From the NCBI GenBank assembly GCA_964247055.1, contig OZ176057.1, forward strand, positions 3,596,001 to 3,660,000: a DNA stretch of 64,000 bases, in the 5' to 3' direction. Positions 115 to 63,447 of the stretch are shown in pieces. The notes under the pieces were generated by a model. The model saw only the letters and a program-made list of their open reading frames with translations. It was not told where the DNA came from and did not search any database. The DNA is from Paragordius varius (Eukaryota; Animalia; Nematomorpha). Within the stretch, counting starts at the first letter, position 1, and each line of letters starts with the position of its first letter. Position numbers and translations under genes: made by a program.

Positions 115-366
115 CCAGGGATCAAAGTTGGTGCTTCTTGTTGTAAAATAGCAAGACCCTCTTGAATTTGCATTAGAGCTTTCATGGCTTTCGGGTTACT
201 TAAAACGCTTTGTAAATTAGGGTTTTGCATCTTTCGGGCGATTGGAATAAAGAAAAAATTATATGAAACCATAACTTTTATTTAAAAAAACTATTTACTG
301 GTTCAATAAAAGAGAACCTAAATTAGTCTATGCTTGGTTATAAAAGTTTAAAGTTTAATATTATCG

Positions 367-401
<35 letters not shown>

Positions 402-2378
402 AAACTGATGCAATATTCATTAATTATCCGCTATAACCGCTAATTTTTTATCAGTTTATGTTAATGTGTTTAAGTGAAATTAAGGGATATCCATATTAAA
501 CAATAAAAGAGGAATTATTACGGTACTTTTTAAATTATGGCTTTAATTATTCTAAAAAATTTATAAAATATAACATACTTGTTGAATAAAGAGTGGTAAT
601 TGAGCCTTAATTTGTGCAGCTAAGGTTGGATTATTTGCAAACATTGGGTTGGACATTATAATCTAATGTACATGTGTAAAATAAAATAAAAAAACATTTG
701 AATTAATTATTATAGGGTCAAAAAATAATTAAATGATAAATAATAAAAAAAATTTTGCTAATTAAAAAATGCGTTTTATTTATATGCAATAAACCATTTT
801 AGTACCAAATATTGCTACAATATACATTTTAATGGTAGTTTTCACACTATATATAGGCGATTTGGAACAGGAGTGTATAAAAAAACATCAAAATAAATAA
901 CCAATTATTTCCTTTCTTTTTCCATACACTACTACTGTGTTGCAAATTGCCCGCCCTACTATAGTGTGAAATAAGCAACCATTAAAATGCATACTCTAAT
1001 GTAAAAATACAGTCATGTATCCTTTATTTTATCTAAAATTTATTTTCTTTCGTTAAATAGGGGTATAAATATTTGGTAAAAAATGGAAAAAACAAGAGCT
1101 CTATGGTGATTCTTATACTTTTTTGATGAATATGATTTTGTTAATACCATAGAGCTCTTGTTTTTTCCATGATAAAAAACATAAACGTTAAAACTAAATG
1201 ACAATATATATTTTAGAAAAGACAATCCCAGCCAAACTCTTTCAAACCTAAACTTTCCGTTCATAAACATTATAATATCAATTTCCATCTCTTCCTTAGT
1301 CACATAGTACTACAATACTATTAAGAATAAGTTATATTTGAAAAAGACTATGGGGGTTGCCTTTTTAAAAAATATTACCAGAGTTAAATATTTTTGCGTT
1401 TTGTCGGTTTTCTAATTTTTACTGTAATTTTTTAATGGAAATTTTTTAAAAAAACGTTCATCACCTAATATTAATGATAGGAAAGTTAAGTAAAAAATTA
1501 TATTTCTAAACATCTTATGCTATAAAAGGTAATATCTTTGACACTTTTATTTTATAGACATTTTTCAAAAATTTTAATTTTAAAACAAATTTCAAGGTTA
1601 AAAGAAAAGCCTAATCATCAAATTTTAGTCAGTGCATACAAAATTAAAATTAAAGAAAAAATATATTACAATGAAGACAATATATATATGCTCTAGTATC
1701 AAACTTGTTTCGGGATTTAACCATTTTTATCAGAAATATCTCTCAGCCGAACAAAAAAGTTTGATTTTTTTTGTAAAAAATGACAATTTTTAATAAAACT
1801 CATATGTTTTTCCATTAAAAATTGTTTAAACATATCTTTATGGACATAAATATTTTGTTAACAAAAACATCTGTGCGTAATTAATCCTATTTTATTCAAA
1901 TAAAACTTTTGTTGGACAAAAAATTTTTTTCAGAATATCTATCCACCTACCTGTTCATACATGGATGGATTATTACTCAGGGTTTCAAGGGTACTTTTCA
2001 TATATGGACTATTTATAAGGTTTTGCATTAGGCCAGGATTCGCTGACATTTGTTGTAATAAACTTTGCATGCTGGCTGAGTTAAAGGCCGCTAACATATG
2101 TCAAAAAGTAAAATAGGGATAGAATAAAAAAATTCTGCCGAAACAATCAAAATTTGCCCAAATTGGTTTAAAAAAATTTCGTTTTTATGATTAAACAAAC
2201 CCTTAATGCCATAAATTTCTGTTTGCTAACAATTAACTCAATTAAATCATTTATTTGCCTATTATTTCAAGAATTCATAAAATTAAAGGGAAAAAATGTC
2301 GGTCAAAAGGTTTTTTATAAAGTTACGATTTCACATTTTGCAAAAAATATGCGCGCATAGACCCAATTTTTTACATAT

Positions 2379-2424
<46 letters not shown>

Positions 2425-5400
2425 TAGATATGAATAGTGGAACATAAAACTACCCCAAAAAGTCACGATATATGCGCAATTTTAAATTATTAAATAATAA
2501 TTTGATGCACCCAAAGAAACCTAAACTATTTAATTGAGTCAATCAACTACTCAAATTTATAAAATTCAAATTTTTAAAACATAAATAATGCAAAAAGTAT
2601 CATAGCTATCTATTACCATGCACAAAAAAGTGCTTAAATCTCAAATTAATATAAAGCCATTTAAAAAAACATAAAAAGTTAATAAAAAATTACCTAAATT
2701 ATCAAAAATATAGATAGTTTGCGAATCTTGGGTTAATAAACTCACTTTATTTTTACAAAAAAAAACAAACTTTAAAATATATAAATAACTCATTTTTTTC
2801 AAAGAAAAAACAAAACTTAAAATTATAAAAAATTTACGAATAGTTGTAGATCCGATGCCGGTATTAGAAGTTGGGTTTATTTGAGCCCTACTAACATTAA
2901 CATTAGTGTTAGAAGTCCAGGGGTTAGGCATAGGTGCATTAACACTATTTCCTCCTTCTACCGTGGTAGAGTTTTCATTGGAATTAACATTCATTGCATT
3001 ATTATTTTGATCTAAAATGTTGTGGATTAATTATAAAAAAGGAAATAACATAAAGACAACTATATTAATTTGACTTTAAAGTTTTAATATTGTTAATAAA
3101 GATATATTAATTTGACTTAAAGTTAAAAAAATGTTTGTTAAATTTAATATAGACACACTTTTTTTCGTAGATAAAAACCATATTTTTGAACAATTGATTC
3201 GATTTAATATACTATATTATTTTAGAAGTGTACGAAGGATAGATATGTAATATAGTGACAAACTCAATCTTATGTTTCATCCTAATATATATTTATTTAA
3301 AATTTTATAAAAACGATAAAATTCCTTTTCTCCTTATATATGTATTCAATCTTGATAAACTTAAATATTTTTATATATAATTAAATTCTATTCTCCTTTT
3401 TTTTAATGTTTTATTTTGGTTTCTAATTTAAATTTTAATGTATAAAATAATGATATCATGTAAAGTTAAAAAAATGTAAAATTTCCATAATCTCATTAAA
3501 CTATTTATATGTTTTTGATAAAAAAATTTGTAGAAAATTAAAATAAATAAACTTCTTAAGGCTGCAAAAGGATTTGCACCAAATTGATCTGTTGCTGCGT
3601 TAAGCAATGGTTCCTGAACATCCGTATACATACGTCTCAATAAATTATATCCTCCTGGAATGCTCTAAAAAAAGTTAATATCATTAAAAGAAAAATTATG
3701 TAATTGTTTGTGTAAAAATTATTGAAATATTATATCAGGGCGGATTGTAAAAATTGATATAACTTAAATGACAATCAATTTTTTTTCATTATATAATACC
3801 TATCTTTTTGAGTTATGTAAATTGGTAATACATACAATCAACTATATAATTCATCTATTAGGTTTATAAAGAAAAAAAATATCAAAATTTAAAATTGTAA
3901 GCCTGTCTATATACATGCAAAAATATTTGTATTTTAATTTTACTGTGTTAGTAGAAGTTTTTTTAGTGGTTACAAATAACAGTAACTAAATATAATGTAT
4001 TATATGTAAAGTTTTATTTAATACTTATAATATCAAATATATGGCCGTTTACTGTAAAAACTAAAAACAATTCAGCCCCCTATCCCCCCTTAAAATTAAA
4101 CTTTTATTATGCACTTTTCAATCTTAGAGCAAGGGTAATCCGATGTTTAGAATCAAAGAATTAAAATTGCCTATATACTATATGAGTAAGTATACATTGA
4201 TAATTAACACCGAATAGCATAGTTTTAGCAAAGGGCAATATATATACCATTTTCAATCAAACTCTCCCTTTAACAATTAAATTCACCCTAAAAATAAATT
4301 ATGTGTTTTCTGGCTAATATAAATCATCATTTATAAGGAATGTATTCTTATGGCATAGTATATTATTTTTTCAGTATTATATCAATTCAAAATGGAATTT
4401 ATTATTTAAAAATATAAAAAAATATAGGTAATTTTAAATCTTGCAAAAAACACATAGTTTTTTTAGGGTGAATTTGAACTGTAATTGGTATAATTCGCGT
4501 ATAATTAATTTTTTCACTCTATTTTTTAATGTTATATTAAACGACAATAATAATCTCCTTGCCTTTAATATGAAAAACTAGCAATATATGTATAAAATAC
4601 GTACTCATATTGTATCCTAACAAAATACTTAGATAAGTGATAAAATGAACGTTTTGTTTTAGGAGCTTATATAATATAATCAACTTAAGCAAATTAAATC
4701 ATTTCAAATCTTTTGAAGAATTATTCAAAAATATCGATGATATACAGTAACGAGCACTATACTTTTACAGGCCATATTTGGGATTCAAATGGTTTTAAAA
4801 AGAGTAATTAATTCCCATGTGTGCTACCATTTATGACATTTTTCATATTTATTAGTGACATGTTAATTTGAACACACCCTGCCCCCCCCCCCCCCGACCC
4901 ATAATTTACAAAAATGCAAATAAAACGAAAAAATCTTATATACCTGGTTGCTATGGTTACTGACATGTAAATTAAATACCCTCTAACCATTTAAATTACA
5001 ATAGTATGGACTTTATAATAGTGCTCATTACAGTAGAGTTAAATAACGAGCGTAATACAAATAAGAATATGATTTTTTCCCTCTAAATTGTGTATTGCAA
5101 TCATTAGACGCCAGCGAGAAGGTCCTATTTTATACTTAACACAATATTTTATTCTTATATACCAGTAATACTTCAAAATAAACATTGATTAATTCATATT
5201 TACTATTAAACAAATCAAATTTACCCTAAAATATATTATGTGTTTTTTAGGAGTAAAATTACTGTTTTTTTTAATATAATTAAAAAGCTAAATTCTCTTT
5301 TAAACAATACTGAAAGGATATTAAATTATGCTATACATACTCCATATAATAAGCGAGTATTGGCCCAAAAACACATAATTTATTTTTCGAGTGAAATTGA

Positions 5401-5626
5401 TTCGAAGGCACATAAAATTAAAAAAAAATTTTAAAAAACGATTACTAAAAAGATCAACTTTGATTCAAAACTCTATAACTACTATATTAAAAAGCTTAAG
5501 AAGAACTAAATTTATATGTACCTCTAAATTACTTAGGGCCCTATCTTGATTCCTCATCATCTCCTGTAACATAACAGGATTTCGCGCTAATTCCATAGTC
5601 TAATATAAAAATTAAATCCTAAAAAA

Positions 5627-5667
<41 letters not shown>

Positions 5668-6876
5668 TCATAATCATATTTTCCAATTATCATTTATTTA
5701 GTATGATGTTTTAATTATTATTTTATTAATGTTAGTTCATTCATTGAAAAGGTAACTAACATGTATCAAAAAAATTGGACACTGTTAAACTTAAATATAT
5801 TTTATCATCAAATATTAAACAATTTTATAATTTAGATATTTAAAAGATAATTGGTTTTTTGAATTTTGTAAAATTAAATCTTTGCTATATTTATATAAGT
5901 ATATACTTCTCTCATAAGCTCAGGGTTATTTAGTACATGGCTCAATTCAGGATTGCGCTAAAAAAAATAAAAAAAAATTAAAATATAAAAAAAGACAAAA
6001 GGTGAAAATTAAAAGACAATTAAATTATAAATAATATGACATATAAATATCTTTGCATTTTGAATTCCATAATAAGAAATAGAGATGCAATTTGTAACAT
6101 ACTCAATAATATATTATACCATTTACAAATCAAATTCACCCTTAAACAATTCAAATTCACCCTCAAATAAAAGATATGTTTTTTTTAAGGATTAAAAATT
6201 ATCTTATATATTTTAAAATATAAATTTTGTTTTAAATAAAAAAACCAAAAACATAATAAACTATGCCATAAGACATATTATAAATTAATAATTAGTTATA
6301 TTAGTTCAAAAACACAATTTATTTTTAGTCTAAAATTAAATTGTTCGAAAGGTGAAATTGAATTCTAAATATGATTATTGGAAAATCGGTTAAAGTAAAG
6401 TATTTATCCAAAAAAAATATTTCTTTATTTTGTCTTAAATTTTTTTATTTAGTAATTACAATTATAAGAAAAATAATATCATACATATCAAACTGCTTTC
6501 GGCGTTAAATGTAACATTATAAATTAAAAAAAATAAAAACGCCATCACAATCTATTAAAATCAAAAACTTAACAAATAATATATTTATATAAATGCCAAG
6601 TTTTTCCTCATTATTTTATTTAAATTTCAATTACATATATTAAAAAATTGAAACCATTTTAGTTTAAAATTTAACAATTTTTCCAAAAATTCAAAAAAAG
6701 TTCAAAAAAAAAATTTATACAAAAGTTTAAAAAATAATTTGTTACATCCATTAGTTCCTGCATTTGAGGATTAGAAGCCATGAGATCTCTCATTATGCCA
6801 GGGTTCCCCATCAAATTTTGTACCAAGGGATTATTTAACATTTGTTGCATAAGTTGTGGATTTCCCATTAGCTTTT

Positions 6877-6913
<37 letters not shown>

Positions 6914-9900
6914 ATTTACAGTTTAAATTCACCTCACCCTTGAACAATTCAAATTCACCCTTGAACAATTCAAATTTACCCTTTTGAACAATTCAAATTC
7001 ACCTTTGAACACAATTCAAATTCACCCTTGAACAATTCAAATTCACCTTTGAACACAATTCAAATTCACCCTTGAACAATTCAAATTCACCCTTAAACAG
7101 TTCAAATTCACCTTTGAACACAATTCAAATTCACCTCACTCTTGAACAATTCAAATTTACCATTTACAGTTTAAATTCACCACCCTTGAACAATTCAAAT
7201 TCACCTTTGAACACAATTCACCCTCACCCTTGAACAATTCAAATTCACCACCCTTGAACAATTCAAATTCACCTTTGAACACAATTCAAATTAACCCTTG
7301 AACAATTCAAATTCACCCTTAAACAGTTCAAATCCACCCTTAAACAATTCAAATTCCCCCTTTGAACACAATTCAAATTCACCCTAAATGTAAATTATGT
7401 GTTTTCGAACTAATATAACTCCTCATTATTAATATGAAATATGAGTTTATGGTGTAATTTATTATTTTTTCAGTATTAATTTAATTTAAATTTTCGAACT
7501 AATATAACTCCTCATTATTAATATGAAATATTATGAGTTTATGGTGTAGTTTATTATTTTTTCACTATAAATTTAATTTAAAACAAAATTTTTATTTTTA
7601 AAAAAATATATTAAATATAGATATTTTTTAATCTTAAAAAACATATATTTTATTTGAGGGTGAATTTAAATTGTTCAAGGGTGAATTTAAATTGTTTAAG
7701 GGTGAATTTGAATTGTTCAAGGGTGAAATTGAATTGTAAATGGTATATATATAGTGCAAAAAAATTATTAACAAAATAATTTTTTTTCATGAGATAGCTT
7801 ATGACCAGCGTATTCATTTGCCGCAAAATTTTTTATTTGCTTACGACCTGTAGATTTTTAAATATTGGGAGAAAATCTAAATCGGATACAAAAAGTGAAA
7901 TAAAGGATAATAAAGGATGATTTGAGTATTATGATTTATTATCTATCATTTTAGCAGATATTTTTAATATATAAATAGTCTAAAATCTTATAGTTAGGCT
8001 TTCTTCTCAGTTCAAAAGGCGTATTTCTTTTAACACACTTAAAAGACATTTTTTTTAATGAAACTATATTAAAAAAATTTTTTAATTAATTACTAGCTAA
8101 ACTCACTATTAAAATCTTAACAGTCATATATTTTATTAAGTAAATATTGTTTATTATTTTATCATTTTTTGTTATTTGGTTCTAACTATATGATTTTCGG
8201 CTATTTTTATATTGAAAATATATTTTAAAATGATAATAAACCATAATATCTCAACTTTTATCATTATTTTTTAACTTATCCTTAATTACCCTTAATTTTC
8301 ACTTTTTGCAGTATTTCAAAAACTAGGTCGTCAACAATTTTAAATTTTTACGGCAAATAGATTCACTTTGTTCATGTAAAAATTTATGTTCAAAAACATT
8401 AACCTATGCATTTTAATGGTTGCTTATTTCACACTATAGTAAGGGGGACAATTTACAACACAGTACTGTATGGAAAAAAGATAGGGAAAAATTATTTATT
8501 CAGCATTTTATCGTTTTTTCCATACACTACTGTGTTGCAAATTGCCCCCAACTATAGTGTGAAAAAAGCAACCATCAAAATGCATACTGTAAATATAAAA
8601 AATATATTTAGATTTAAAAAAAGCTTTTTATTTAATAAAAGTTGACAAAAAACTTTAAGAAATAAGGTATACTCTCTAACAAATAGATTTTATCATCTAA
8701 TAAGAGGTAAAACAAGGAAAATTAGTATTGGCTTAAATAACCTTTTTTAGCTTTTTCTTACTATTAGAAATAAAATAAGCAATGTATAATTACTCATACT
8801 GTATACCAAATATTATAAATGTATAAATTTAGAAACCATTGGGATTTAAGGTAGAATTGTTTTTTATAGAGATACCTAAATTTCATGAGATAAGCTTATA
8901 AATTTGTGTTATAAGTTAGTTTATTTAAACTGGTTTATTATTAAAATTGTGTGTAATAAAATAATATAGATGTACTTTGATTTTTAAGCTTAGAATATGC
9001 TTTTACCAGTTTTATATGATATTAATTTTTAACATAAATTTTATAAATGTTAGCATAGAAATCGTAAGTGAACCAACCTGTTACCGGTTTCGAATTATTT
9101 TTTGATAAAATCGATGGTTTTGAAAAAAAATATCATCCGGTTTACAAACATTTTCGCCCAAAATATAACAGTTTGAGGTAAGGGGTTAATTTTTTACACT
9201 TAAATAGTTATGAAAGGTAATAGATAGTTTCAATTTACAAATTCAAAAAATATTTTTAACTAAGTTACAATATAATTTTTTTCGTTAATAAAATTTGATA
9301 ATATATGTATTCGAATATCAAAAAGTATTTTTTTCACATTTTTATCACCGTAATTATTAGTCTTACAATCTAAATTTTGGTGATTTTTTTCATTAGCATT
9401 TGAAATGTCGAGATTATTGTGAAACAATGTATGTATAATTGTAAAAAATATTATAAAGAATTTAAAACCACAAAAACTTACTATGATAATATTATTTATA
9501 TAGTAAAAAATCCTTAGATAGTATATATTTTAAGTAAATAAATTCAAGAAATTAATTACGGTAAAAATTGAAATTATACGGACAAAACCTAAAAATATAA
9601 AGAAAAATATTTTTTGTCCAAAAAACAACCATACTTAAACTTCATTTTTAAAAAGATATCTCATTGTTTTAAATTGCAAATTACAAAATTGATATGTATA
9701 TTAGTTCCACTATCAATTATATATTTTACAATTGTAATCATATAATTTATATGAGAAAAATTAAGGTTTATAAAAGTATGGTTGACTTTAAAAAAAAATA
9801 TTTGTCTTTATATTTTTACTTTTTGTCCGTATAATTTCAGTTTTCTGTATAAGCATTAACAAATATTTTAAAAGATTTTAGAGCTATGATTGTAAAAACA

Positions 9901-11959
9901 ACTTTATTTAAATTGACCATTTTTGCTATAGTTTATTGCCGCCAAAATTAGGGAGAGAATTATTAAAAAATTTATTTAATAAAAATATTTTAACTGGAAT
10001 TTCGTAAAATTTTGTGGTTAAGATTTTCCCTGAGCCCCTTAGAGATGGAAATTAGGTATTTTACGCTTTGTATTCGGATAAATTAGGGTTTAAAAAAAGT
10101 ATATGGTTATCTTTTGAAGGTAAAAATTTTTTTGTCTTTTTTCGTTTCATCTGTATAATTTCAATTTTTATTTTATGTTATAAAATTATTTTAAAAAACT
10201 ACCTCTCCTTGTAGACGTTGTTGAAGATCATTCATGTTGGCTATATTTATATTTGTAACATTAAAAAAATTATAAAAAAATAAAATTATATAAATTTTGG
10301 AACATATTCAAAATGACAACAAATTATTTGAAATAGATTTATAAAAATAAAATAAAAGGCAATATATAAAAAATGTAAAGCCAAATTCATAAATTTTTAT
10401 ATAATAATTTATGAATAATTGAACAATAATTTAGTAATCCCATTAGATTTATAAAGGTACACCACCAAGTGAAATAGCTGCCTTTTATAAAAAAAGATAT
10501 CTCTTATTTCGGTAAACTTTGATTTGTAAAAAAAAATCAAACTGCCAAAAGAAAAATTCACATAAAAAATGTATTGATCGGTCTAAAAAAAATATATATA
10601 AAAAAGTTGGAAATTTATTTAAAAGCGTGTCATAAAATATCGTCCCCAGCGTTAAAAAAATTATATAAAGTTTTATATCGACCAAACCGCAAGGAAAGTT
10701 AAAACACGCCTGAATGAACACACGTATAACATAAAGAATGGGGATTTTAAAAGTTGTATTGCGGAACATTGTTGAAAGGAAAACTATAATGTTTCCTTTG
10801 ACAATGTCAGTTGCATTACGATTTTCAATAATAATCAAAGGTTTACACGAGAATCATTAGAAATTCTCAAAGGAAACAACTTTAACCGAGAGGAGGAGGG
10901 ACAAAAGATGAGTGATATATGGAAAGTCATTATTCTTGATGATTGATCCCATATGGACTCTTTTGTTTTCAACTCAAAGTTGTTGTCCCTTATTTATTTT
11001 TTGTGTCCTTTTTTTAGTATATGGTTGTAAATTTAATAAATTGTTTGTTCGACATGGTTAAAACCACTCTCAATGACAAATTGTTTTAACTTATCATTTT
11101 TTAAGGAAGAAACAACAATAAACGTTTTAAAAAAATTGTATAAAGAACAACCATTTTATCCAAACTCATTTATATATATTTTTTAACGCTGAGGACGGAC
11201 ATAAGTTATAGTGTCCGAAACCGTTGGCAAATTTTATTTATTCTATGACACGTTTTAAAATAAATTTCCATATATTTTATAATATTCACGTGTCGAAAAT
11301 GATTTATATTCTACAATAAAAAAATTTTGCCTAGAAAAAACAAAAATGCCACAAATCCGATTTTCAGGAAAATCAAATTGTCAATTTATGTTTTTTTAGA
11401 AAAAAAAACTTTAACATCACCTGATCCTAAATTCATGTTTCCTAAACCAGGAATCCCACCGATTGATCCTAAATCAAAAGGAGAAGCAGCGATATTTGGT
11501 GGGTGGTTAGGTGTTGTTCCAATATTATTATTATTTCCCTAAAATTTAAGATGCATCAAATAGATAAAAATAAATGTGTTAGTATTTAGATATAAATAGT
11601 TATAAAATACTGATATTTCTTGCATCCTGGATGTAGGCTCAATTGGCTAAAGAATTATAAAACTTTATAAACTTTATTGGGACTCCGAATTACCAAATGA
11701 ACAGTCAACCCATCCTTTATATCTAATGTAATATATAATATGCGTATTACTTAATTCAGTTAAAGTTTGTCCATCCTTCAAGATTTTACCAGCAAAAATT
11801 AGGCATAATTGTTCCGCAGGAGCATTATATAATTTTGAAATTTGATTTTTTAACTATGGATAAAATTAAATTTCAAACCTCATCAACACTTGCATTTTGA
11901 GAAATTTCTAATTCTTTCTGCTCTTTTGGTGTTTTAATTTTTAATTTTATAAGGGACAT
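115..11959 (-). CDS. UBQLN: Ubiquilin (UBL + STI1 repeats; UBA-encoding 3' end lies beyond the window start)
   Basis: Exons on minus strand: 11879-11959, 11751-11853, 11673-11722, 11611-11646, 11421-11538, 10203-10240, 6746-6871, 5907-5957, 5522-5599, 3553-3664, 2838-3011, 1951-2090, 579-662, 115-230. All introns are GT-AG and phases are consistent (435 codons + 2 nt). Translation gives a UBL domain ([13 protein letters not shown]...[15 protein letters not shown]...[12 protein letters not shown]) and ubiquilin motifs ([72 protein letters not shown]). Confidence 0.95.
818..996. mobile_element. Family C MITE copy
   Basis: Degenerate TIRs with the same core (CCATACACTACTACTGTGTTGCAAATTGCCC). 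Confidence 0.8.
1010..1175. mobile_element. Family B MITE, right-truncated
   Basis: TA|CAGTCATGTATCCTTTATTTTATC left arm with the AAGAGCTCTATGGT core. Confidence 0.8.
4247..4488. mobile_element. Family A MITE copy
   Basis: tata|CCATTTTCAATC...GAACTGTAATTGG|ta with the family core (ccctaaaaataaattatgtgtttt). Confidence 0.8.
4745..5033. mobile_element. Family J Tc1/mariner-type MITE
   Basis: TA|CAGTAACGAGCACTAT...ATAGTGCTCATTACAG|TA, with an internal C14 run at 4882-4895. Confidence 0.65.
6119..6372. mobile_element. Family A MITE copy (degenerate right end)
   Basis: tata|CCATTTACAAATCAAATTCACCC left end, family core, GGTGAAATTGAATT right end. Confidence 0.75.
6912..7743. mobile_element. Family A MITE (CCATTTAC...GTAAATGG) in a (TA)n tract, with expanded 21-23 bp subterminal array
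   Basis: Perfect terminal inverted repeats flanked by TA repeats. About 19-20 copies of TTGAACAATTCAAATTCACCC at 6920-7385, inverted copies at the right end, and an internal tandem duplication of roughly 90-100 bp at about 7400-7580. Confidence 0.9.
7754..8400. mobile_element. Family F palindromic deletion derivative
   Basis: Left arm (TTTTTCATGAGATAGCTTATGACCAGCGTATTCATTTGCCG) and inverted right arm (GGTCGTCAACAA...CGGCAAATAG). Confidence 0.75.
8405..8589. mobile_element. Family C MITE copy
   Basis: TATGCATTTTAATGGTTGCTTATTTCACACTATAG...AAAATGCATACTG|TA. Confidence 0.85.
9559..9847. mobile_element. Family G MITE (TA|CRGTAAAAATTGAAATTATACGGAC...GTCCGTATAATTTCAGTTTTCTG|TA)
   Basis: TIRs with TA flanks. 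Relatives at 61501-61775, about 10090-10170, about 38480 and about 63485. Confidence 0.8.
10450..11290 (+). mobile_element. Decayed Penelope-like retroelement 3' fragment (GIY-YIG endonuclease) in ubiquilin intron 5
   Basis: Frame 10671-10946 reads [90 protein letters not shown], the PLE pattern YIGQT.R.LKTRL.EH...S.IAEH...R...ES.EI....NFNR..G...IW. A degenerate GVYKI-like stretch (CHKISSP) lies upstream in another frame. Confidence 0.85.
11185..11230 (+). ncRNA. Hammerhead-ribozyme-like core of the Penelope element (probably degenerate)
   Basis: CTGAGGA (11189-95), C, GGACA/TGTCC stem II with a 10-nt loop, then GAAAC (11217-21). It lies downstream of the PLE endonuclease. Stem III and the cleavage triplet look truncated. 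Confidence 0.55.
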
Positions 11960-13376
11960 ATATTTATGTTGCAGACAAGGTATAAAAATGAATTTATGAA
12001 AATAAAAGTGCAGAATTTAAAATTTTTTATTTATGTGAAAATATATTTATTATAAATAATATATTAGAGTATATTATATCCGTACTAAATAAAAATTTTT
12101 TGGTAAAAGTTAAATGCTTTATTATAAAAATATTATAAAATAGCATTAAACTAAAATTATAAATTCAAATTGTTAACTCTCTTTTTTAACCTTTACAATG
12201 AAAAGATATTTAAAAGCACAAAGTCTAGGTTTTGCGGAAAGATTTTTAGATATGGTGTAGATGTGACAGTCAAATATTATCCTTATGAAACATGTGTATT
12301 TTACAGGAAAGTATCTGGATTATAATGTTTGTTTTAGGTGGCATTAACAATTAAAAAGGTTGTGTCACTGTTTTGGTAACTGCTCATATCAAGCAAAATT
12401 TGCGCACAATTATTTCAACCAATTTTTTTGAATAAAACTAGGTTCTTCATAAAAATATGTAAATATATTATGACCTACATATGAAAATCAAGATATATTT
12501 CTATAAAATGTGATTTTAGATTTTGTTATTTTAAAATACTTATTAATATAAATTGGGATAATAAAATCTTAAATATACAGTTAGTAGATATAATATTCTG
12601 ATAGAAAAAAAATCAGGAGTATCATGATGCTTATGGTTTTGGTCCTTACGAGTGGTAAAACAATGTTATTTTAATTGTATTCTGAAAATGACCAAATTCG
12701 CATTTTATTTAGTATAATATTTTTGTCTAAAGCTGATGTTTCATTCTATGAACATATAATGAACTATGCATAAGAAGTATATAACATTCTCAAACTTTTA
12801 ATATTTAGATGTATAAATGTCATAATTTTTGCTCTTCTAAAATGAGATAGTTCTTTTTAGAATAAGCGTAAAAATGCCGTGTTCGCGAGGCAAATATTTT
12901 AAATATAGGCTAAATGTACAACTATGAAAAATTAATACCTTTTTTGGTGTTTTTAGCGTTATTTTGTTGAAGCGTACTTCATAATACTTTGAGGCGAAAC
13001 GGTAAAAAACCCTTACGATAATAAATTTTTTTTCAATCTTATTGGACGATGCTGAATATTTCTATCGCTTTAGAAATATATTTTAAGGTTAATTTCTTAA
13101 ATTTTTGGCCCATTTGTATAAACGCATAGTTATGTCATACATTTGATGAACCAATACTTATATCTTTAAAATGACCTCAATATCAACTTTTCTTGCTTGC
13201 TAAGATTTAATTTTTCATCACAGGCTTGAAAAACAAGTCAAATCACAGTTTGTTTATAAAAAATATCCTGAAATTTTTGATATGAAAATGTATCTCAAGC
13301 TTTTGATTTTGGCTTACGGAGTGATATAAAAAATTATTATTTGTAGTATCATTCAGAAAATAAGGAAACTGGACAT

Positions 13377-15415
13377 GGGTGGGTTTATAAAAAAATTTTT
13401 TGACCTGACTTGCAAGTTTTTCAAGTCATGGCTTGCTTTCATGTGATAAAATATATAACAATAGAAGACATAAGTCAAACAAGAAAACTTGATTCGGAGG
13501 TGATAAAAAATCATATGCAGGTAAAACTTAAAAATTTTGCAAGTAGGGCACACTTGACAGATTCAAAAATATGGATAAAATTATTTTGGACTCTATTTAT
13601 GTATAAAATTTAGGTTTTATGGGTCAGGTGATAAAAAATTTTTTTGACTTGACTTGCAAGCTTTTCAAGTCATGGCTTGCTTTCATGTGATAAAAAAATT
13701 TAACATTACACGACTTAAGTTAAGCAAGAAAACTTGATAAGGAGGTGATAAAAAATCATATGTTCAAGTAAAATTAAAGATTTTGCAAGTGTGGTGTAGG
13801 GCGCACTTGAAAGATTTAAAAGTATGGATATTATTTTGGAAACTATTTATATACAAAATTTAGGTTTTATATGTAATTAAAACCTTTATTAATGCTATAA
13901 ATTGTTAATTTGATAAATTTTGGCTAATTAATCTATTCATTGGGTGGATACAAAAGACGATAAATTTATAGAAAAACTCTGCTAATATTAAATAAAATGG
14001 CACATTAAAATATGCTAAATATATCAATTCCGTGACCGCAAAAAAATTGGATTCTCGAAAATTTCTTAAAATTAATATTTAAATATTAATCTTGTAAAAT
14101 TTCAAATCTTCGTTTATTAAAAGCAAAACTTCACTTTTATCCAATGTAAAGAATTTATTTCATCATAAATTTATTTCGAATGTAATGTTTATAATCCATT
14201 TAAAATAATTATGTTATATTGTATAAACATCTTCCCACTATATTCGCAACTGGACTCCAAAAATAAGTTGTGTGGTAAAATAATGGAAAGTGTTTTAAGG
14301 GCGAATGGTTTCATCAATCTAAAAATTATTACCAGGCTCACAATTTAGAAAACTCTATAATATTATATAAGATACGTGCCCACTGAGTTTGAAAAACATC
14401 AATAAATGCATATTGTATTTATTTTTTATCTTTTTGTGCCTTATTTTAAAAATTTAGCTGAAAAGGATCAAAAAAATTTCCATAAAATTCGAATTGGGTG
14501 GCAAAAAACTGTTACATTCATAAGCAAAAGACTTGACTTAAGTGTTTTTTTATCACCGATCTTCAAGTGTACACTTGCTGGCTTAAGTAATCTTGCTCAA
14601 CTTGCCACGCTTAGCTTACAAGTCAAGTGCGACTTTTTTATCACTCCACCCTATAAGTAATTCAACTTTTGTTAATGCTATAAAATGTTAATTTGATAAA
14701 TTTTGGCTAATTAACCTATTCTTTGGGTGAAAACAAAAGAGGATAAATTTATAGAAAAACTCTGTTAATATATAAGAGCATAGCACATAAAAATATGCTA
14801 ATTATATCAATTCCGTGAACGCAAAAAATTCGATTATCGAAAATTTGTTAAAATTACTAATTAAATGGTAATCTTGTAAAATTTCAAATCTTATTAAACG
14901 CTAAAGGTTACTTCACTATTAACTAATGTAAATATTTCATCATAAATTTATTTCAAATGTAATGTTTATAATCAATTAAAAATAATTATGTTATATTGTA
15001 AAAACATCTTCCCATTATATTTGCAAATGGATTCAAACAAAATGAGTAGTGTGATAAATGGAAAGTGTTTTAAGGGCGAATGGTTTCATCCATCTAAAAA
15101 TTAATATCAGTCAATATTTAGAAAACTCTTTATCATTAAATAAGATACGTGCCAGTGATTTTGATCTTTAATAAATGCATATTATATTAATTATTTATAT
15201 TTTTGTGTCTTATTTCATAAATTTTGGCTGAAAATGATCAAAAAAATTTATGAAATTCGAATTGGGTGGCAAATGTTTCATTTATAAGCAAAAGACTTGA
15301 CTTAAGTGTTTTTTTATCACCGGTCTTCAAGAGTACACTTGCTGGCTTAAGTAAATTTGCTCAACTTGCCAAGCTTGACTTACAAGACAAGTGCGACTCT
15401 TTTATCACCCAACCC
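13377..15415. mobile_element. Family D ~1 kb non-autonomous DNA transposon (outer, interrupted copy)
   Basis: GGGTGGG(G)TGATAAAAAA...TTTTATCACCC(C)ACCC termini. Halves 13377-13620 and 14652-15415 join into one contiguous family copy. Confidence 0.85.
13621..14651. mobile_element. Family D copy nested inside another family D copy
   Basis: Complete 1031-bp copy flanked by a TAT direct repeat (tat|GGG...CCC|tat). Confidence 0.9.
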
Positions 15416-18400
15416 TTTATTTAATAAATTTTAAAAATATAATTTACAAGAAATATGATTAAAATATACCATAAATAAGTATAAAAAGGGAGATAAGCTC
15501 CGTTTCAATTTTTTTCGTTCCTCTAAAATTATCTAGTTAACTTAAAAAAACCACAAAAATTTCGAGACTACGAGATAAGAATTACATATATATATATATA
15601 TATATATAAATTTTGATATTAACTTTTGAGAATTGCATAATCTTAAAAATATACCCTCAGCTAAATTTGAAGCGACTTACTATTTTGAAACATAAGTGTT
15701 AATCGCATAATGTATTTTTTTAAAACGTAAATTATGAAAATCTCTTTCTCGCCGCCTTTTTTAAATTTTTCTAAAACCGTGATACAACAGGCAAACAAAT
15801 AAATAATTTACAAATTGAAAAGCTTTCAAACCATAATTGTACACAGATTTTTAAAAATTATGGATTTCAAAATAAGCTGCGTTATGGATTATGGGAGCCT
15901 GAATTTAGGATTTTATAAGCTAAAAAACTGTAAAAATAAGACGTTTCTTTGATACAATAATAATTAACTATTAATTAAAACACTTGCAAACCATTTAACA
16001 CAATTAGGAACTGAGATATATTCCTACCCAAAATGGATAGATTAATAAATTTTGTAATACAATGAAAGATTCGATTTAATTTAGGATAACTAGTGACTAC
16101 ATTTATTACTTTAAAATTATTGATATTTCAGCTTATATTTAATTTTCAATATTATAATAAGCGAAAAAATATTGCTTTTAAAAAAAGGTTCATATTAAAC
16201 TATTTGATTTATATCCACGATATTTTTGGAGAGTATCGTGTTTTAAATTTAAACATTTAAGCTAATTAATTTTATAATCAATACATTTAAATTAAAAAAG
16301 TGTTTTATTTTCTATATATATTTTGACAATGCACAAATGTCATGGATAAATCTCCACCTTCGGGATTATCCATAAGATATATATTATCAAGTTTTGTTAA
16401 AATCTTTATTTATTTTTCGATATTCAAACTTTTTAATGTTAATTATTCCATATTTAAATAAGATTTGATTTTACAGACCTGGGGTAACCAACTACCTCAA
16501 TTTGATATAAAGTATACAAGTGTTAAATTTAACAAATACACATTATTTTAACTTTTTTACGTTTAATTGTGATACGAGCCTTATATTGGCTTCAAAAACA
16601 TTTTTTATACTTTTATAATTATTCAATATAATGGATTAATAATTATTCCCATATTATTTTTTTAAGTCTAACATATTTTAACTAGTTCAAATTAAATTAT
16701 AATGAACAGATTCTATAAATTCGGACATGCCCTTAAGCTAATCAAAACGGTAATTAATTAAAAATAATATATTTAAATTTTGCTCCTATTTGCATTTTTC
16801 TTATAATGACCCGTAGAGTTTTATTCGCATACTTTTTATATAAGGTCCCCTTTAACTGTATGATTTTTGAATTTTTTATTATCTCCAATCTCAGGTATTT
16901 AATTATAAATATATTTTTTTTATCTATCTTATAAAATTTATTAATTAGTTTTACATATTTTATTGGATTGGTAATGCTTATGTATTTAAAATGTCAAATA
17001 TTTTTGTGTCAAAAATACTCATAAGGAAAGAAGAGGGAGGAATGTCAATATTGGGACATTTGAATAAATAAAAACAGAGTTTTTTTAGGGGTTAATTTAC
17101 ACTTTTTTATTTTATTTACATTATTATCATAGAGTATATATGTATTTTTGCATTTAAGATTGATTTTTATATATTTTCCTTCCATACACGATTTTGCTGA
17201 ATAATGTTATTATTGTTAACTAACTGTTTTTATATCCCTTAACCTACCCTCCTCCCCATTTTATCTATGTTTAATGAGAGAGATAAAAAATGTCAAAATA
17301 AATATAATCATTGATTTTTTAATTAAAAGATATTTATGACATTGCGGCACGGCGGTGTTCATTATAATTTTTAAACCCATTTTTTGTGGTTACATACATA
17401 ATTATTTAAAACTCATCATATGTTTTTTTTTTCGAAATTTTAAATAAGTTTTATATATAAATTTTTCCAGGGGTGTGAGGAAATTGTTTTTTTAAATTTT
17501 TCAATATTTTTACAGTTTTTTAAATTTCACAATAAGGCGGAAAGTCAGCTCTTTTTTTAACAATTGTACGATAATAATAATAAGCCATTTGTAAGTGTGT
17601 TGATGCAACAAATTTTTTGCCTTAAAGACTTAATTAATCATGGTTTAACATTTATTCATATAATCACATATAATTTTTATAATGAAATACAAATAAAAGA
17701 TTATATAAAGCAAGAGGGGCAACGCCTATTAAAGCGGAAAAATTCTAATGGGGGCGCTAAAAATTTGGAGAATTTAATTAAAAAAATAAAACTAAATATA
17801 TATTATTAAAGGATTTCAGGTGTGAATTATCTAGGTTTGTCACCGATATGGAAAAGATATATTTTCAAAAAATGTAAATATAAAGATCTCATTGATTGGG
17901 ATTTTTATAATATCATAATATATTTTACATTTTTGACTTGGGGATTTTTTTAAGAGGGGGGCGGCGCAAGAATTTTTTGTTTTCAACTTGGTGGCGGTGT
18001 GAACAAATTGGTAACCACTAATTTTAATTTTTTAGTAATATTGTTATTCGAAAATTTTTTGCCATATTCTAAAATTAAAATTATTTGTCAGTCTCGAATA
18101 TTTTATAAAATAAAAGTTTTTAAAATTCATGTTTGTAAAGGCTTAGATATACACTCGCCTGTGTAAAAATTAATCAATATATCATCACTTAGGCCGTTTT
18201 TTGGGGAGATTTAAAATAAAAACTAGGTAGGTAACATTACAGTATAACATATCTCTTAATGAATGATAATTCTATTTTTGTCTTTATTTGGCTTATATAT
18301 GTATATATATTATGTCTATTAAAATTTTTAGATAACCCAAAATTCTAGTGCCAAGAATATTGCATTATTCACCCCACTACAATTTCCAAGCTACATAAAT

Positions 18401-19439: not shown

Positions 19440-22258
19440 TAGATTTCAAATAATTATTAATTCGTATACATCATTTTATTTTTAAGTTTTAAAAATTTTC
19501 AAATTTTCTAAGAACATCAAAAAATTTGTGTGATGTCTATGCCAATAAATAGTATTTACGCCAATTATCTTATAAATTATTAATTATCATTTCAAAGAAG
19601 GGATGATATTTTTAAGTCCAATGTTGCGATATTTCTTGGATTTAATTATAAAAAAGTTATAAAAAAATTGTTTTCCAATAAATAATTTATATGCATGTAA
19701 CTTTATATATTAATTTTCGTAAAATAAATAGGCTGGTAGCTCAAAAGTTATTTTAAATGAATATGTATATATCCATGAATAGATCATTCGCGATATTAAA
19801 TATTTATGAAATTAATTACTAGAGCTAAGTTAATGCCGTTATATAGTCTAAAATTTTTTTTAATTTTAAATTATATTGGATAATAATTTATATATGACAT
19901 TGTGCTGTTTAGGTGACCTTTACAAAACGCAAATTTGGCCTTATGAAAAAAGCTTATGAGCTAAGCGTTCTCTGTGATTGTGATATAGCACTGATCATTT
20001 TTAGCCCAAACAATAAATTATTTCAATACGCAAGTACTGATATGGACAAAATTTTGCTTAAATACACGGAGTATAATGAACCACACGAGAGTCGTACAAA
20101 TAAAGATATCTATGATGTAATTTACATTGTACTATTAATTATGAGTTTGGTCTTAAACACTTTAAGTTTGTATCCTTTATAATTTCAAGGCCGTTTTTAA
20201 TTATTTCAAGTTCATTGTTTTTCATTCCAAGGCCACTTTTTTTGAAAATTGAAATAGCCCATTTCTAAATGATTGTGTCGAGACACAGTTATGTATCCTT
20301 TATTTATTTTATTGAAAATTTATGTTTTTTCGTAAAATGGGAAAAATATTTGGTAAAGAATGGAAAAATCAAGAGCTCTATGGTAATTCTTATACTTTTT
20401 GATCAATAAGATATTGTTAATATTATTAAGCTCTTGTTTTTTCATTCTTACCAAATATTCATCATTTAACGAAATAAAATTAATTTTTGATAAAATAAAG
20501 GATACCTGACTGCATATATGTTTTTTTCATAGTCCTGCTTTATTGTTTTTCAATATGCACTGGCGATATTACAAAATGTTTTATTGAATTTTATCGTTTA
20601 AGTTTTTTTTAATTATTACATCTTTGTTACCTAAAGGAAAAACTGAATATATTTTTTCACACAAATTTATCATTTATTGGATGAAATAGTGGAAATACAA
20701 AAGTATTATTATTGTTAGCGTGTTGTTAATAATTTTCTTTATATTATTCAGACCCTTGGCCGTAAAGCAGCGGCAAATTCGACAGCCGCCATGCATTCTC
20801 TAAATAACGGTCTGCAAACATCTAGTTATTCAAATGACGAAGATAATTTTTCTGATGATCCTGATAATGGGTGTGAAACCTCAATGTTAGCCTCTTCCGA
20901 CAACTATTTCGGTTTGGACCAAGATCATATGTCCGTTGCTGATAGCAATGCACAAACCGTTACCGGTTTATTCAATGATCGGAGACAACATCTTTCTACA
21001 TCGCATGATCGGATAAGTTCGCCGTATTTAAGTGCAGCCTCCAAAAATTATCTGCGACAAAATTCACCTTTGCTAACTAGTCATTACTTTAAGGACGGTA
21101 TCTATACGAATAATAACGATAATACCAATTCACATGACAGGGCAAATCAAAATTCATTTTCACATGGTAAAATTGGTACTCCAAAAAATAATAACGGTTT
21201 CAACACACCAAACGATTATAGTAATGATACGCAGACGACTATCATACACAATAGCAATGATAATATCAGCAATACTAACAAGGTGCCTTCAGAACATTTT
21301 TTAAAATCTGTACGTCCTGTAATCAAGGAGGAAGCTATGTTTGATGAAGATTTAATGGATTCTACTTGTTGTACCACTCAGCAAATCGGTTCAACGGGTC
21401 AATTATCACCTAGCTTGGAACGGGCCTATTCAACCAACCCAAAGGTTAATTTTACTATATGATGTCGGTAAAATATATGATGGAAAAAATAATTTTCAAA
21501 ATTTGTTAAGTTTCAATGTTTTCGTTACACTATCTCATTCCTTAATATTAGTTAAATTTATTTTATTCTATCGATAGATCTCATCACATACATCTGAGTG
21601 TCCCAACGATAATATCAATAACCCAAATATGCCACCATTGCTATTTACCAAACTGAATAGTGGTGATGGCGATGTTTCTCAGGATAATATACCTGCTTAT
21701 GTTCAACAAAATACTTTAAATACCACTCAAGTTATGACCCATAAACATAATTTTCAAAATAAAAATACCTCATCTTTATCTACAAATTTAATGCCTGAAA
21801 CGATAAAAAACCCAAATGTCAACGAAACGGGCACTTTTACAGATAAACATCCAAACACTGCCTATTCTGCTATAGAGCATCCTCCTTCCATGTTTGCAGC
21901 AGGTGGTCATCCCAATTATTCATTTGCTTTTTATCAACAAGCTGCGGCTTATAATATGATTGCACCCCATGCTTTTTATGCCGTAGCGGCTAATTACGGT
22001 TTTCCAAATGCAAATAATGTAAATATTTCCACCATAAATACTGCGTATCCCCTTACAAATTCTAACAGCCAAAATTTAATTTCGTCTTTAGCGGAAGGAC
22101 TGCAAAAACCTATAGCCTCTATACCAAACTTTTATAGTGTGGCTGAAACTTTGGCAACAATACAACACAATCTTCCCAATCATCCAACTAATGATTGCAC
22201 CGATAACATTACTAATAGTGGTAATAATAATGAAATGAAATCATCACAACTGCAACAA
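18990..22258 (+). CDS. MEF2: Myocyte enhancer factor 2 (MADS + MEF2 domain), exons 1-4
   Basis: Exons 18990-19043 ([18 protein letters not shown]), 19913-20116 ([31 protein letters not shown]...[30 protein letters not shown]), 20752-21444 and 21578-22258. All introns are phase-0 GT-AG, and the introns after codons 18 and 86 match the animal MEF2 pattern. Confidence 0.95.
19088..19361. mobile_element. Family A MITE copy in Mef2 intron 1
   Basis: Left end after tatata, subterminal units and family core. Followed by (TA)n(TACA)n. Confidence 0.75.
20285..20512. mobile_element. Family B MITE copy in Mef2 intron 2
   Basis: CAGTTATGTATCCTTTATTT...ATAAAGGATACCTGACTG palindrome. Confidence 0.85.
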
Positions 22259-22289
22259 GTATTTATTATTTAGCATATATGGGTTTTTT

Positions 22290-22500
22290 AAGCTTTTCCA
22301 CCTCCACATGGTGTTGATTGGATCATGGTTTGTCAATTAACAGCATAGGGCAGTTTTGGATGTCTGCAAAAACATGTAATTAAGGATTTTGGGCAGTGAA
22401 ATGTGAAAATCTCACATTAATTCATGCTTCATGTATAAAGACCATAGTAAGGATTTTTAAAGAGTATAAGCACTCTTTACCCCATAATTATTCATATGTG
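22290..22500 (-). mobile_element. Possible decayed Tc1 transposase relic in Mef2 intron 4
   Basis: Minus-strand fragments YTL*KSLLWSL and DPINTMW..K occur in the order of Tc1 Y..ILE..LLPS...DLNPIE..W..LK. Confidence 0.35.
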
Positions 22501-22799
22501 TCAGACTAAAATTGAGCAAAAGTTATAAAAATTAATAATCAGTTTTAACTATAGCAACAGCATTTATAACCTCAAAAATTTACCACAAAGTGATGTCCAA
22601 CACACGGCTCTCTGAGAATATATGTGCGACCCTCGAAAAGTTTGGAATAAGATTTGTAAAAATAGGTTCACAAAATCTTAGCAAAATTAATATTGAGCAA
22701 ATTTTCTGAAGTTTATTCAATTGATTGGCTACAGGACTAGGAAGTTATATTGTGTTCGCATTTTACACTTCTATGTTTGAATCCAATAAATAATATATA

Positions 22800-23146
22800 C
22801 CATTTACAGTTTAAATTCACCCTTAATTCAAATTTACCCTCGTACAATTCAAATTCACCCTCGGACAATTTAAATTCACTTTAAAATAAATTAAGGTTTT
22901 TAAGACTAAAAATTACTTATATTTTTAAATAATGAAATGTTGTTTAAAATTAAAGTAATGCTAAAAAATAATAAACTATGCCATTAAGATCTATTTCATA
23001 TTAATAATGAGTTATATTAACCCGAAAACACATAATATTAGGGTGATTTGAATTGTTCGAGGGTGAATTTAAATTGTTCGAGAGTGAATTTTTGAGAAAA
23101 TGCGCTTCGTTAAGCCAATTGTGTTAGAGACCCCTGTATTAAATGG
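22800..23146. mobile_element. Family A MITE copy with a short hAT-like fragment inserted near the right end
   Basis: ta|CCATTTACAGTTTAAATTCACCC left end. The right TAAATGG|ta at about 23140-23146 is displaced by about 45 bp ending ...AGAGACCCCTG. Confidence 0.75.
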
Positions 23147-24975
23147 TACATTTTGTGTTTTATTTACCTTTACATTTTTCTTAAGGTCATACATGTGTTT
23201 ATTTGTACAAAAATTCAAGGTTTAATAAGATTTTTTGTAAAGTACATCTCAAGGTTTTTTTTTCTTCATAAAAAATTATTGTATCCATATAGGTTTCTTC
23301 TTAACTATATAATTATCACTATAATTTTAACATTAAATAATATTATATATATTAGGTGGTTAATTGATTTAGTACGCTAACCCTTGATAGTGTTGTTATT
23401 GTTAATTTCATCATATTTGAAATTATATATATTATTATCTATATATTTTTATAACCTCCTTAGAGATAGATAATAAGGTATGAATGGGGGATAGTTTATC
23501 AGGGATAAAAATTTAAAATTGAAATTATTTTTCAAGTTATGTACTTTGCAATCGATTGATTGATTGTTATATAGTTTTTAGAGTTAACTCAGTATGAACT
23601 TTATTTAAACAAAAAAATAGAATAAAATTTTTGGTGGGTGTATTTGATATGAAAATTTTCAAATAATATATATTATTTTACATGTAATTCATTATCTATT
23701 ATAAAAAACAATTAAAAACCATTTTTGACTTAAAAACCTGAAAATTATTATTTATAATTTTTTGCTTAAATTCAATGCAAGCATTGTAGTAATATAGCAT
23801 CTATGTTTTAAAGTTTTTAGAGTAGCTTTTAATGAACATCAGATTTTTTATTAAAAACCTCTAACATTTTCCTGTTTAAGTTATTAAAATTTTTTAACTG
23901 TTAATTTATTTTTTTGCCATAATATATATGTATTTATCTAATCGCAAAGTAGTTTTTGCATGAAATTTTAGTTTTAGGGATATCCAACACAAAAGGCTTC
24001 GCCGACCGCATTTTATGTTTGGCATTCATTAATTTTTATTATTGCAAACGCAATCTAAAATTTTCCTAATTCCCTACTAATTGGATAGACCAGTGGTGTA
24101 TACTCACCCAAAAAAAATTTGAAGTACCAAATAAAATATTTTTTGCTTTAATAGCGATGAATGTTGAATTCCTCTTCGTTACATATGCAGATATTTATTT
24201 TACTTTCAATCTGAGTTACGTGACATATTGCAGGTCGCATATAAATAGCTTTATTGATATGAGAATATTTTAGTAATTACATTTTTAACAATCACTTTTA
24301 AGGACATATTTTATAATTACCAACATTCTCAGCAAATCTGGTTTAGCAAGACCAATCTTATCTTGTTATCATTTTAAAAGATGTTTGTGCGTGTATGTAA
24401 GTATACACTTCGTTTCGATTTGGGATAAGCTGACAATATTTAAACTCATATTTTTAAAAAACAAGTGAAAATAACAGTTCTAGTTTATATTTTTACTTCT
24501 ATTATCAAACAAATACAAATAACATTTAGTTTTGAAAATCGACATCCTTTTTGTTTTACAACGTATTTGCAATTATCGTACTTTTTATTGTTCCTAACGC
24601 TAAAATCATAGTTAATTTTTTATTTAAATCAAATCTAACATAGATATAAACAGAATGTTTATGCATTATTTAATTTTTGCAATGGTTTTAATTAGTTCCA
24701 TCGGGGTTTCTAATGACCACAATTTGAATCGAATGACTGAAATGAATGTGTTTTTTCCAAATTTTAAAAATGTAAGAATATTTTTATATTTATTTGGCAT
24801 CGAAATATATTTTTGGAAGGAACACATCTACAAAGTTGGAATTTAAACCAATTTAATTATTAACTAGATGTGCATATAAACAGATAATTACCCTAACGAA
24901 AAATAAAAGAAAATCTTTTAAATAACCAATAAAAATTAAATATCGACTTAAGATAAAAAATTTTAGATATATATA

Positions 24976-33140: not shown

Positions 33141-33439
33141 ATAGATATTACAGACTTCAATGTGTTTAAATAGAATATAATAAATATTTTTTAATATAGC
33201 CTTTTTTTCATAATTACTTACATTATCATCAGATATCAATGCCTAAACTCAGCAGTTAAAAAGTTAGTACGGAGTTTCGGAATCAATATCTTTTTGAGGT
33301 TTATCATCCTGCAATCACAAATTCTATCAAAAGATCTGCTTTATTCAAATTAACATTGAAAAATTTGCCTATTAAATTATTTTTTAAATAACTCTTGTTA
33401 TGAGGGCTCAATTTTTAACAATTAAATATTAATTTTCAT

Positions 33440-47309: not shown

Positions 47310-63447
<16,138 letters not shown>

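What the first reader, a model, noticed from the sequence alone, without database searches (positions are those of the whole stretch)
11539..11878. Three ultra-short spliceosomal introns (25, 28, 26 nt) in the ubiquilin UBL domain
Seen: the UBL domain reads through only if three tiny GT-AG segments are removed: GTTTGAAATTTAATTTTATCCATAG (11854-11878, 25 nt), GTAATACGCATATTATATATTACATTAG (11723-11750, 28 nt) and GTTTATAAAGTTTTATAATTCTTTAG (11647-11672, 26 nt). They flank exons of 103, 50 and 36 nt, and none is a multiple of 3. Established: introns this short are typical of ciliates, nucleomorphs and dicyemids, and are well below the usual minimal intron class of most animals. Inference: this animal has a spliceosome able to excise 25-nt introns even though its genome is TE-rich rather than compact, which would be an unusual splicing system.
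Basis: partly seen in the sequence, partly recalled or inferred. Interest (0 to 1): 0.85.

Follow-up and report, generated by a model that had tools for sequence, protein, structure and literature searches.

The report
Tiny ancestral introns in ubiquilin gene
An intact ubiquilin gene of this AT-rich, repeat-rich animal (probably a horsehair worm) begins with introns of only 25, 28 and probably 26 bases, at exactly the places where sponge, placozoan, scorpion and brittle-star genes have ordinary introns; animal introns this short are published for only two other groups, but I could not show the cutting in RNA.

Summary
The three GT-AG segments are at the stated coordinates (- strand). They sit at the same codon and phase (0, 1, 0) as introns 1-3 of sponge, Trichoplax, scorpion and brittle-star ubiquilin, which have identical 103- and 50-nt exons but introns of 60-7,664 nt. 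They are shrunken ancestral introns. Introns 1 (25 nt) and 2 (28 nt) are forced by the protein. Intron 3 lies just after the UBL domain: its donor is ancestral, but 26 nt is only the likeliest length (35, 17 or 134 also keep frame). The gene is intact over 435 codons. Unspliced contigs from three other studies match the segments, so this is not an assembly error. The one RNA run laid gave nothing, so splicing is not shown. All four introns of 30 nt or less in the window lie within 300 nt of an ATG; later ones are 72-3,331 nt. Sub-30-nt animal introns are published for myxobolids and dicyemids; 5'-clustered 37-nt microintrons for flukes. The scan found this class many times on other DNA of this genome. 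The hairworm identity comes from those notes; I showed only 'bilaterian'. An altered spliceosome was not tested.

The parts
11879..11959 (-). Ubiquilin exon 1 (coding part, ATG at 11959, 27 codons)
11854..11878 (-). Intron 1, 25 nt, GT-AG, phase 0; ancestral position shared with 6 of 7 homologous genes
11751..11853 (-). Exon 2, 103 nt, core of UBL domain (Pfam ubiquitin E 7e-10); same length in sponge, Trichoplax, scorpion, brittle star
11723..11750 (-). Intron 2, 28 nt, GT-AG, phase 1; ancestral position shared with 4 of 7 homologous genes
11673..11722 (-). Exon 3, 50 nt, end of UBL domain; same length in four homologous genes
11647..11672 (-). Intron 3, most likely 26 nt, GT-AG, phase 0; donor ancestral (5 of 7 genes), acceptor inferred (in-frame alternatives 35, 17, 134 nt)
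11611..11646 (-). Exon 4, 36 nt, phase 0-0 linker exon (GC 0.42); small exons of 30-48 nt at this place in four homologues
11539..11610 (-). Intron 4, 72 nt, GT-AG
11421..11538 (-). Exon 5, 118 nt
115..11420 (-). Rest of the ubiquilin gene in the window: exons 6-14 (STI1 region) and introns 5-13 of 307-3,331 nt, all GT-AG; the UBA end lies beyond the window's left edge
47441..47470 (+). Second instance of the class: 30-nt first intron of an Hsp110/HSPA4-type gene, 107 nt after the ATG; its other 16 introns are 297-1,274 nt

Best explanation
These are ancestral major-class (U2-type, GT-AG) introns of a working ubiquilin gene that have shrunk to 25-28 nt. Shown: position, phase and exon lengths are ancestral; the reading frame needs introns 1 and 2 removed; the DNA is real. 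Inferred: they are removed by the normal spliceosome, recognised across the intron (intron definition) from little more than GT and a T-rich (T)TAG end. The branch point must lie within about 20 nt of the donor, far below the 46-nt human minimum, so this animal's spliceosome tolerates a much tighter 5' site-to-branch distance, as in myxobolids, dicyemids and ciliates. Also inferred: the lineage shortened its introns by deletion, and introns further from the promoter are long at least partly through transposon/MITE insertion, while those within about 300 nt of the start stayed minimal.
For: Same alignment column and phase for introns 1-3 in Corticium (60, 64, 371 nt), Trichoplax (1174, 1021, 89), Centruroides (1791, 2983, 208) and Amphiura (7664, 1520, 879); Lingula lacks intron 2 and has a 153 = 103+50 nt exon. 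12 of 13 window introns share column and phase with at least one homologue. Exhaustive enumeration of GT/GC-AG choices: best score about 250 with 25+28 nt, about 165 if introns must be 35 nt or more. 435 codons, no stop, 13 GT-AG introns. Contigs of three other studies match the segments with 0 differences. A diverged X5 contig shows 1 synonymous change in 73 nt of exon 5 against 7 in the 72-nt intron 4. Intron GC 0.15-0.21 against exon 0.26-0.42. 5' confinement: 4 of 5 introns within 300 nt of an ATG are 30 nt or less, 0 of 27 beyond (Fisher p 1.4e-4, three genes only, cut-off chosen after seeing the data). 27% of long-intron bases lie in repeats seen within this window alone.
Against: No spliced read or contig was seen: RNA run X8 laid nothing, and no listed holder is on record as RNA. 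No branch-point motif above chance (YTRAY in 1 of 3; shuffles 45-49%). The length of intron 3 is not fixed by homology. Many long introns show no repeat within the window, so TE-driven expansion is only partly supported. No spliceosomal component could be examined.
Confidence: 0.88

Rival explanations
1. Introns 1 and 2 are real at 25 and 28 nt, but intron 3 is not 26 nt: it uses the GAG acceptor at 11638 (35 nt), or exon 4 is skipped (134 nt), so only two sub-30-nt introns exist here.
For: These models keep frame and score as well as or slightly above the 26-nt model against homologues, because the linker is not conserved.
Against: 0 of 31 other acceptors in the window are GAG, 24 are TAG. 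Exon 4 has coding-like GC (0.42), and a small phase 0-0 exon is at this place in four other animals.
Confidence: 0.15
2. The introns are real and the animal has a specially modified spliceosome (altered snRNAs, or reduced U2AF/SF1/branching factors), or a promoter-linked mode that handles only cap-proximal tiny introns.
For: Donor-to-branch distance cannot exceed about 20 nt, against 46 nt minimum in human constructs (PMC11291888). Stentor branching factors are non-conserved near the active site (PMC9505925). Tiny introns are 5'-confined in this window. Earlier scan notes mention a U1 C9U variant and a lengthened U2 linker (unchecked).
Against: Myxobolids splice 22-27-nt introns with conserved U2, U2AF1 and U2AF2 (PMC13644364). 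Donors and acceptors of tiny and long introns look alike here. An earlier scan note reports seven tiny introns through a whole 1.5-kb gene (s1-252952, unchecked), so cap proximity may not be required.
Confidence: 0.3
3. The locus is a decaying pseudogene, or the tiny introns are inefficiently spliced relics (as in microsporidia), with function supplied by another copy.
For: No RNA evidence; weak splice sites (4-5 of 9 matches to the U1 consensus).
Against: Open frame over 14 exons with all sites GT-AG; about 60% identity to other animal ubiquilins in core exons; the listed X5 variants fall in intron 4 or are synonymous; long introns have equally weak donors.
Confidence: 0.05
4. The segments are assembly errors or non-spliceosomal insertions (DNA elimination, editing, frameshifting).
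For: None found; only the lack of RNA.
Against: Present unchanged in contigs of three independent studies; GT-AG ends at ancestral spliceosomal intron positions.
Confidence: 0.02

Closest known systems
Ultra-short introns of myxobolid myxozoans and Dicyema (Hadjez et al. 2026, PMC13644364; Dicyema mean 26.2 nt, PMC2222250)
   Same: Animal GT-AG introns under 30 nt at conserved ancestral positions, reduced splice signals, adjacent to other short introns; parasitic host lineage if the hairworm identity holds.
   Different: There the short class dominates (medians 22-27 nt) in mostly compact genomes. Here the median in the window is several hundred nt, with tiny introns confined to gene 5' ends in a repeat-rich genome. 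The gene groups with bilaterians and is not strongly divergent. The paper's main text does not mention Nematomorpha; its 51-species list could not be read.
Microintrons of trematodes and cestodes (Opisthorchis felineus, PMC6530080)
   Same: Short class clustered together and enriched at gene 5' ends, beside multi-kb introns in a large (684 Mb) genome; intron definition proposed.
   Different: Peaks at 37 and 90 nt there, 25-30 nt here; different phylum on current reading.
Ciliate tiny introns (Paramecium 20-35 nt; Stentor 15-16 nt, PMC9505925)
   Same: Size range and AT-richness; same steric problem for the spliceosome.
   Different: Ciliate introns are uniformly tiny. This gene uses the standard code, has kb introns and animal-ancestral intron positions.
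Ubiquilin / Dsk2 family (UBL-STI1-UBA)
   Same: N-terminal UBL matching UBQLN1/2/3 structures, STI1 repeats in order, ancestral exon structure.
   Different: Shorter N-terminal extension; UBA domain lies outside the window.

Membership tests
U2-type spliceosomal intron | GT...AG ends | tested here: met
   All three, and all 32 introns modelled in the window
U2-type spliceosomal intron | Removal restores a conserved reading frame | tested here: met
   Introns 1 and 2 forced; intron 3 needed in some form, its length not fixed
U2-type spliceosomal intron | Position and phase homologous to known spliceosomal introns | tested here: met
   4 to 6 of 7 annotated animal genes per intron
U2-type spliceosomal intron | Branch-point sequence and pyrimidine tract | tested here: inconclusive
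   YTRAY in 1 of 3, chance level 45-49%; T-rich ends but genome is 74% AT
U2-type spliceosomal intron | Excised from mRNA (junction reads) | tested here: inconclusive
   RNA run X8 laid nothing; no spliced joint in any run
U2-type spliceosomal intron | Lariat formation / dependence on U1, U2, U6 | not testable with these tools
   Needs experiment
U12-type intron | RTATCCTT donor and TCCTTAAC branch site | tested here: not met
   Donors GTTTGA, GTAATA, GTTTAT
Animal ultra-short (<30 nt) intron class of myxobolids/dicyemids | Length under 30 nt at conserved positions | tested here: met
   25 and 28 nt firm, 26 nt likely
Animal ultra-short (<30 nt) intron class of myxobolids/dicyemids | Short class dominates genome (median 22-27 nt) | tested here: not met
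   In this window 4 of 32 introns are 30 nt or less; genome-wide not tested
Flatworm-type 5'-clustered microintrons | Adjacent clustering at 5' ends beside kb introns | tested here: met
   Ubiquilin introns 1-3 and Hsp110 intron 1; Fisher p 1.4e-4 on three genes
Flatworm-type 5'-clustered microintrons | Length peak about 37 nt | tested here: not met
   25, 26, 28, 30 nt here
Ubiquilin/Dsk2 | N-terminal UBL followed by STI1 repeats | tested here: met
Ubiquilin/Dsk2 | C-terminal UBA | not testable with these tools
   Gene runs off the window's left end
Host = bilaterian animal | Ubiquilin groups with bilaterians | tested here: met
   Clade support 99/97; no named cnidarian, flatworm, nematode or hairworm row in the tree
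Host = Nematomorpha | Marker genes closest to hairworms | tested here: inconclusive
   No hairworm sequence retrieved; GC 26% and repeat load fit Gordionus (26.9% GC, 63.8% repeats); identity rests on unchecked scan notes

The most novel reading that the evidence does not exclude
A third, independent animal lineage (horsehair worms, Ecdysozoa) has introns under 30 nt, but as a promoter-proximal class inside a transposon-rich genome, so one spliceosome handles 25-nt and 3-kb introns of one pre-mRNA, possibly through changed snRNAs or branching factors or a cap-linked route.
Probability: 0.3. Interest if true: 0.8.

Novelty: new variant of a known kind. Interest (0 to 1): 0.58.

Why it matters
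A September 2026 survey of 51 animal genomes found sub-30-nt introns only in myxobolids and Dicyema and linked them to genome reduction. This gene shows the same size in a bilaterian whose genome is not compact, with 25-nt and 3.3-kb introns in one transcript. That separates minimal intron size from genome compaction and gives a natural test of the spliceosome's donor-to-branch space limit (46 nt in human). Practically, gene finders with a higher minimum intron size will break the 5' ends of such genes, which could inflate apparent gene loss in this lineage (inference). The phenomenon itself is not new in animals, and this locus is one of many examples in this genome.

Tried and rejected
Taxon: Hsp110 exon search gave one unnamed 59% hit; RPS9 exon 1 gave unnamed 93% hits with ordinary introns; PDB best hits do not fix a phylum; tree unresolved below Bilateria. 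Rfam found no RNA gene in the window. The Atlas gave nothing for the long-ORF gene. The sigma-70 promoter scan is irrelevant here. Paper searches for Nematomorpha/hairworm plus intron found no report of short introns; the two hairworm genome preprints do not use the word intron in their held main text (tables held as images could not be read). Rejected: longer alternative introns for 1 and 2 (they delete conserved UBL residues); ciliate source (standard code); U12 type; assembly error. The spliced model existed only inside scripts, for frame checks, alignment with fetched proteins and the tree.

Full report
Observation. The - strand from 11959 encodes the start of a ubiquilin. Exon 2 matches Pfam ubiquitin (E 7e-10) and the UBL structures of ubiquilin 1, 2 and 3. 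The gene continues to the left edge of the window: 14 exons, 435 codons without a stop, 13 GT-AG introns of 25, 28, 26, 72, 1180, 3331, 788, 307, 1857, 541, 747, 1288 and 348 nt.

Are they introns? I searched one STI1 exon by reference, named the hits, fetched seven annotated animal ubiquilin genes and aligned each protein exactly on its own DNA. Sponge (Corticium), Trichoplax, scorpion (Centruroides) and brittle star (Amphiura) have introns 1-3 in phases 0, 1, 0, with exon 2 = 103 nt and exon 3 = 50 nt, as here; their lengths are 60-7,664 nt. Lingula lacks intron 2 and has a fused 153-nt exon. The termite keeps only intron 1, and the ostracod gene has no introns. In a protein alignment the three tiny introns share column and phase with 6, 4 and 5 of the seven genes, and 12 of the 13 window introns match at least one homologue. 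The chance of the five fixed GT/AG dinucleotides is about 1e-7. These are old spliceosomal introns that have shrunk.

How firm is each length? I enumerated every GT/GC-AG combination over exons 1-5. All top models use 25 and 28 nt (score about 250); forbidding introns under 35 nt drops the best score to about 165 and deletes core UBL residues. Intron 3 lies just past the UBL domain in an unconserved linker. Its donor is ancestral, but in-frame options of 35 nt, 17 nt or 134 nt (skipping exon 4) score equally. 26 nt is preferred: the 35-nt option needs a GAG acceptor, seen in 0 of 31 other introns, and four homologues have a small phase 0-0 exon 4 of 30-48 nt.

Reads. No listed holder of the stretch is on record as RNA. 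I laid four runs on 10150-12200. The presumed RNA run X8 gave nothing, which is no proof of silence. Runs X5, X6 and X7 (three other studies, other organism labels, depth 2-6) hold unspliced contigs with no differences over 11839-12019, 11520-11670, 11792-11942 and 11717-11950, covering introns 1 and 2 fully and 24 of 26 nt of intron 3. This excludes assembly error. A second X5 contig (11466-11936) has 16 substitutions and 13 gap letters. The table shows only eight of them: seven in the 72-nt intron and one synonymous change in exon 5. That fits purifying selection, but I could not see how its tiny introns differ. No spliced joint was found. Splicing is therefore inferred, not shown.

Context. 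The window is 26% GC with 32% in self-repeats. An Hsp110-type gene (47334-63449, +) reads open for 942 codons with 17 GT-AG introns; only the first is tiny (30 nt, 107 nt after the ATG), the rest 297-1,274 nt. RPS9 has introns of 61 and 1,065 nt. All four introns of 30 nt or less start within 300 nt of an ATG, and none of 27 further ones does (Fisher p 1.4e-4; three genes, cut-off chosen after the fact). Long introns are 27% repeat by within-window comparison alone, exons 2%, and the interior of ubiquilin intron 5 is deeply covered in X5 (up to 340 against 6-10 over exons 1-4; summed contig depth, a rough sign). Splice signals of tiny and long introns look alike: GT(A/T) and mostly TAG, with no branch motif above chance.

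Host. The ubiquilin falls in a 99/97 clade of bilaterian sequences, apart from sponge, placozoan and alga; the phylum is unresolved and no hairworm, nematode, flatworm or named cnidarian was in the tree. The code is standard. Earlier notes of this scan call the genome a horsehair worm, citing a mitogenome with coding palindromes. I could not test this; GC and repeat load fit Gordionus.

Mechanism. Most likely the major spliceosome removes these introns by intron definition. The branch A can be at most about 20 nt from the donor, against a 46-nt minimum in human (PMC11291888), so the machine must tolerate a tight lariat, as argued for Stentor (PMC9505925). Whether this needs altered parts is open: myxobolids keep canonical U2 and U2AF (PMC13644364). 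The length pattern is best read as deletion-driven shrinkage, with insertion-driven growth of introns away from the promoter; this step is inference, partly supported here and suggested by earlier scan notes.

Comparison and verdict. Animal introns under 30 nt are published for myxobolids and Dicyema only. 5'-clustered microintrons beside kb introns are published for flukes, at 37 nt. I found no paper reporting short introns in hairworms, within the limits of the library. The finding combines the size of the first with the layout of the second in what appears to be a further lineage: a new variant of a known kind. The scan has reported this class repeatedly elsewhere in this genome; the ancestral-position proof here is independent of those notes.

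Noticed in passing
window 47334-63449 (+): Hsp110/HSPA4-type gene, 18 exons in the window, open for 942 codons; 30-nt first intron; exons at 50067-50127 and 50736-51007 add a long Q/N-rich insertion inside the ATPase domain.
   Followed up: partly
window 58714-59576 (+): Hsp110 intron 14 holds 220-255-nt tandem repeats that copy the 3' end of exon 14 together with its GT donor (copies at about 59019 and 59239, a partial third near 59460): possible decoy or alternative donors.
   Followed up: partly
window 37251-38965 (+): RPS9 (uS4) gene, 195 aa, introns of 61 and 1,065 nt; a pyrimidine run just before the ATG resembles a TOP start. Its first intron, 217 nt from the ATG, is not tiny.
   Followed up: partly
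window 20719-28379 (+): Gene with very large low-complexity exons (ORFs of 223, 214, 328 and 246 aa; S/N/T/P-rich) and no Pfam or Atlas match; possibly the 3' part of a lineage-specific regulator.
   Followed up: partly
window 6878-8144, 22783-23091, 51238-51461, 53315-53612 and others: Abundant inverted-repeat (MITE-like) family built on a 21-nt subrepeat, expanded to a 20-copy array at 6934-7385 inside ubiquilin intron 6.
   Followed up: no
window 13375-15425 and 31573-35767, 39890-41695: Larger repeats (245-nt tandem unit; multi-kb, higher-GC dispersed elements) without an intact ORF.
   Followed up: no
window 11663-11672 (-): Intron 3 starts with a near-tandem 9-nt duplication that creates a second in-frame donor at 11663 (17-nt intron if used with the 11647 acceptor).
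   Followed up: partly
runs X5-X7 on window 10150-12200: Exact low-depth matches in runs filed under three other organism labels; may be this animal's DNA inside host or mixed samples. X5 also carries a second, 3-4% diverged haplotype.
   Followed up: no
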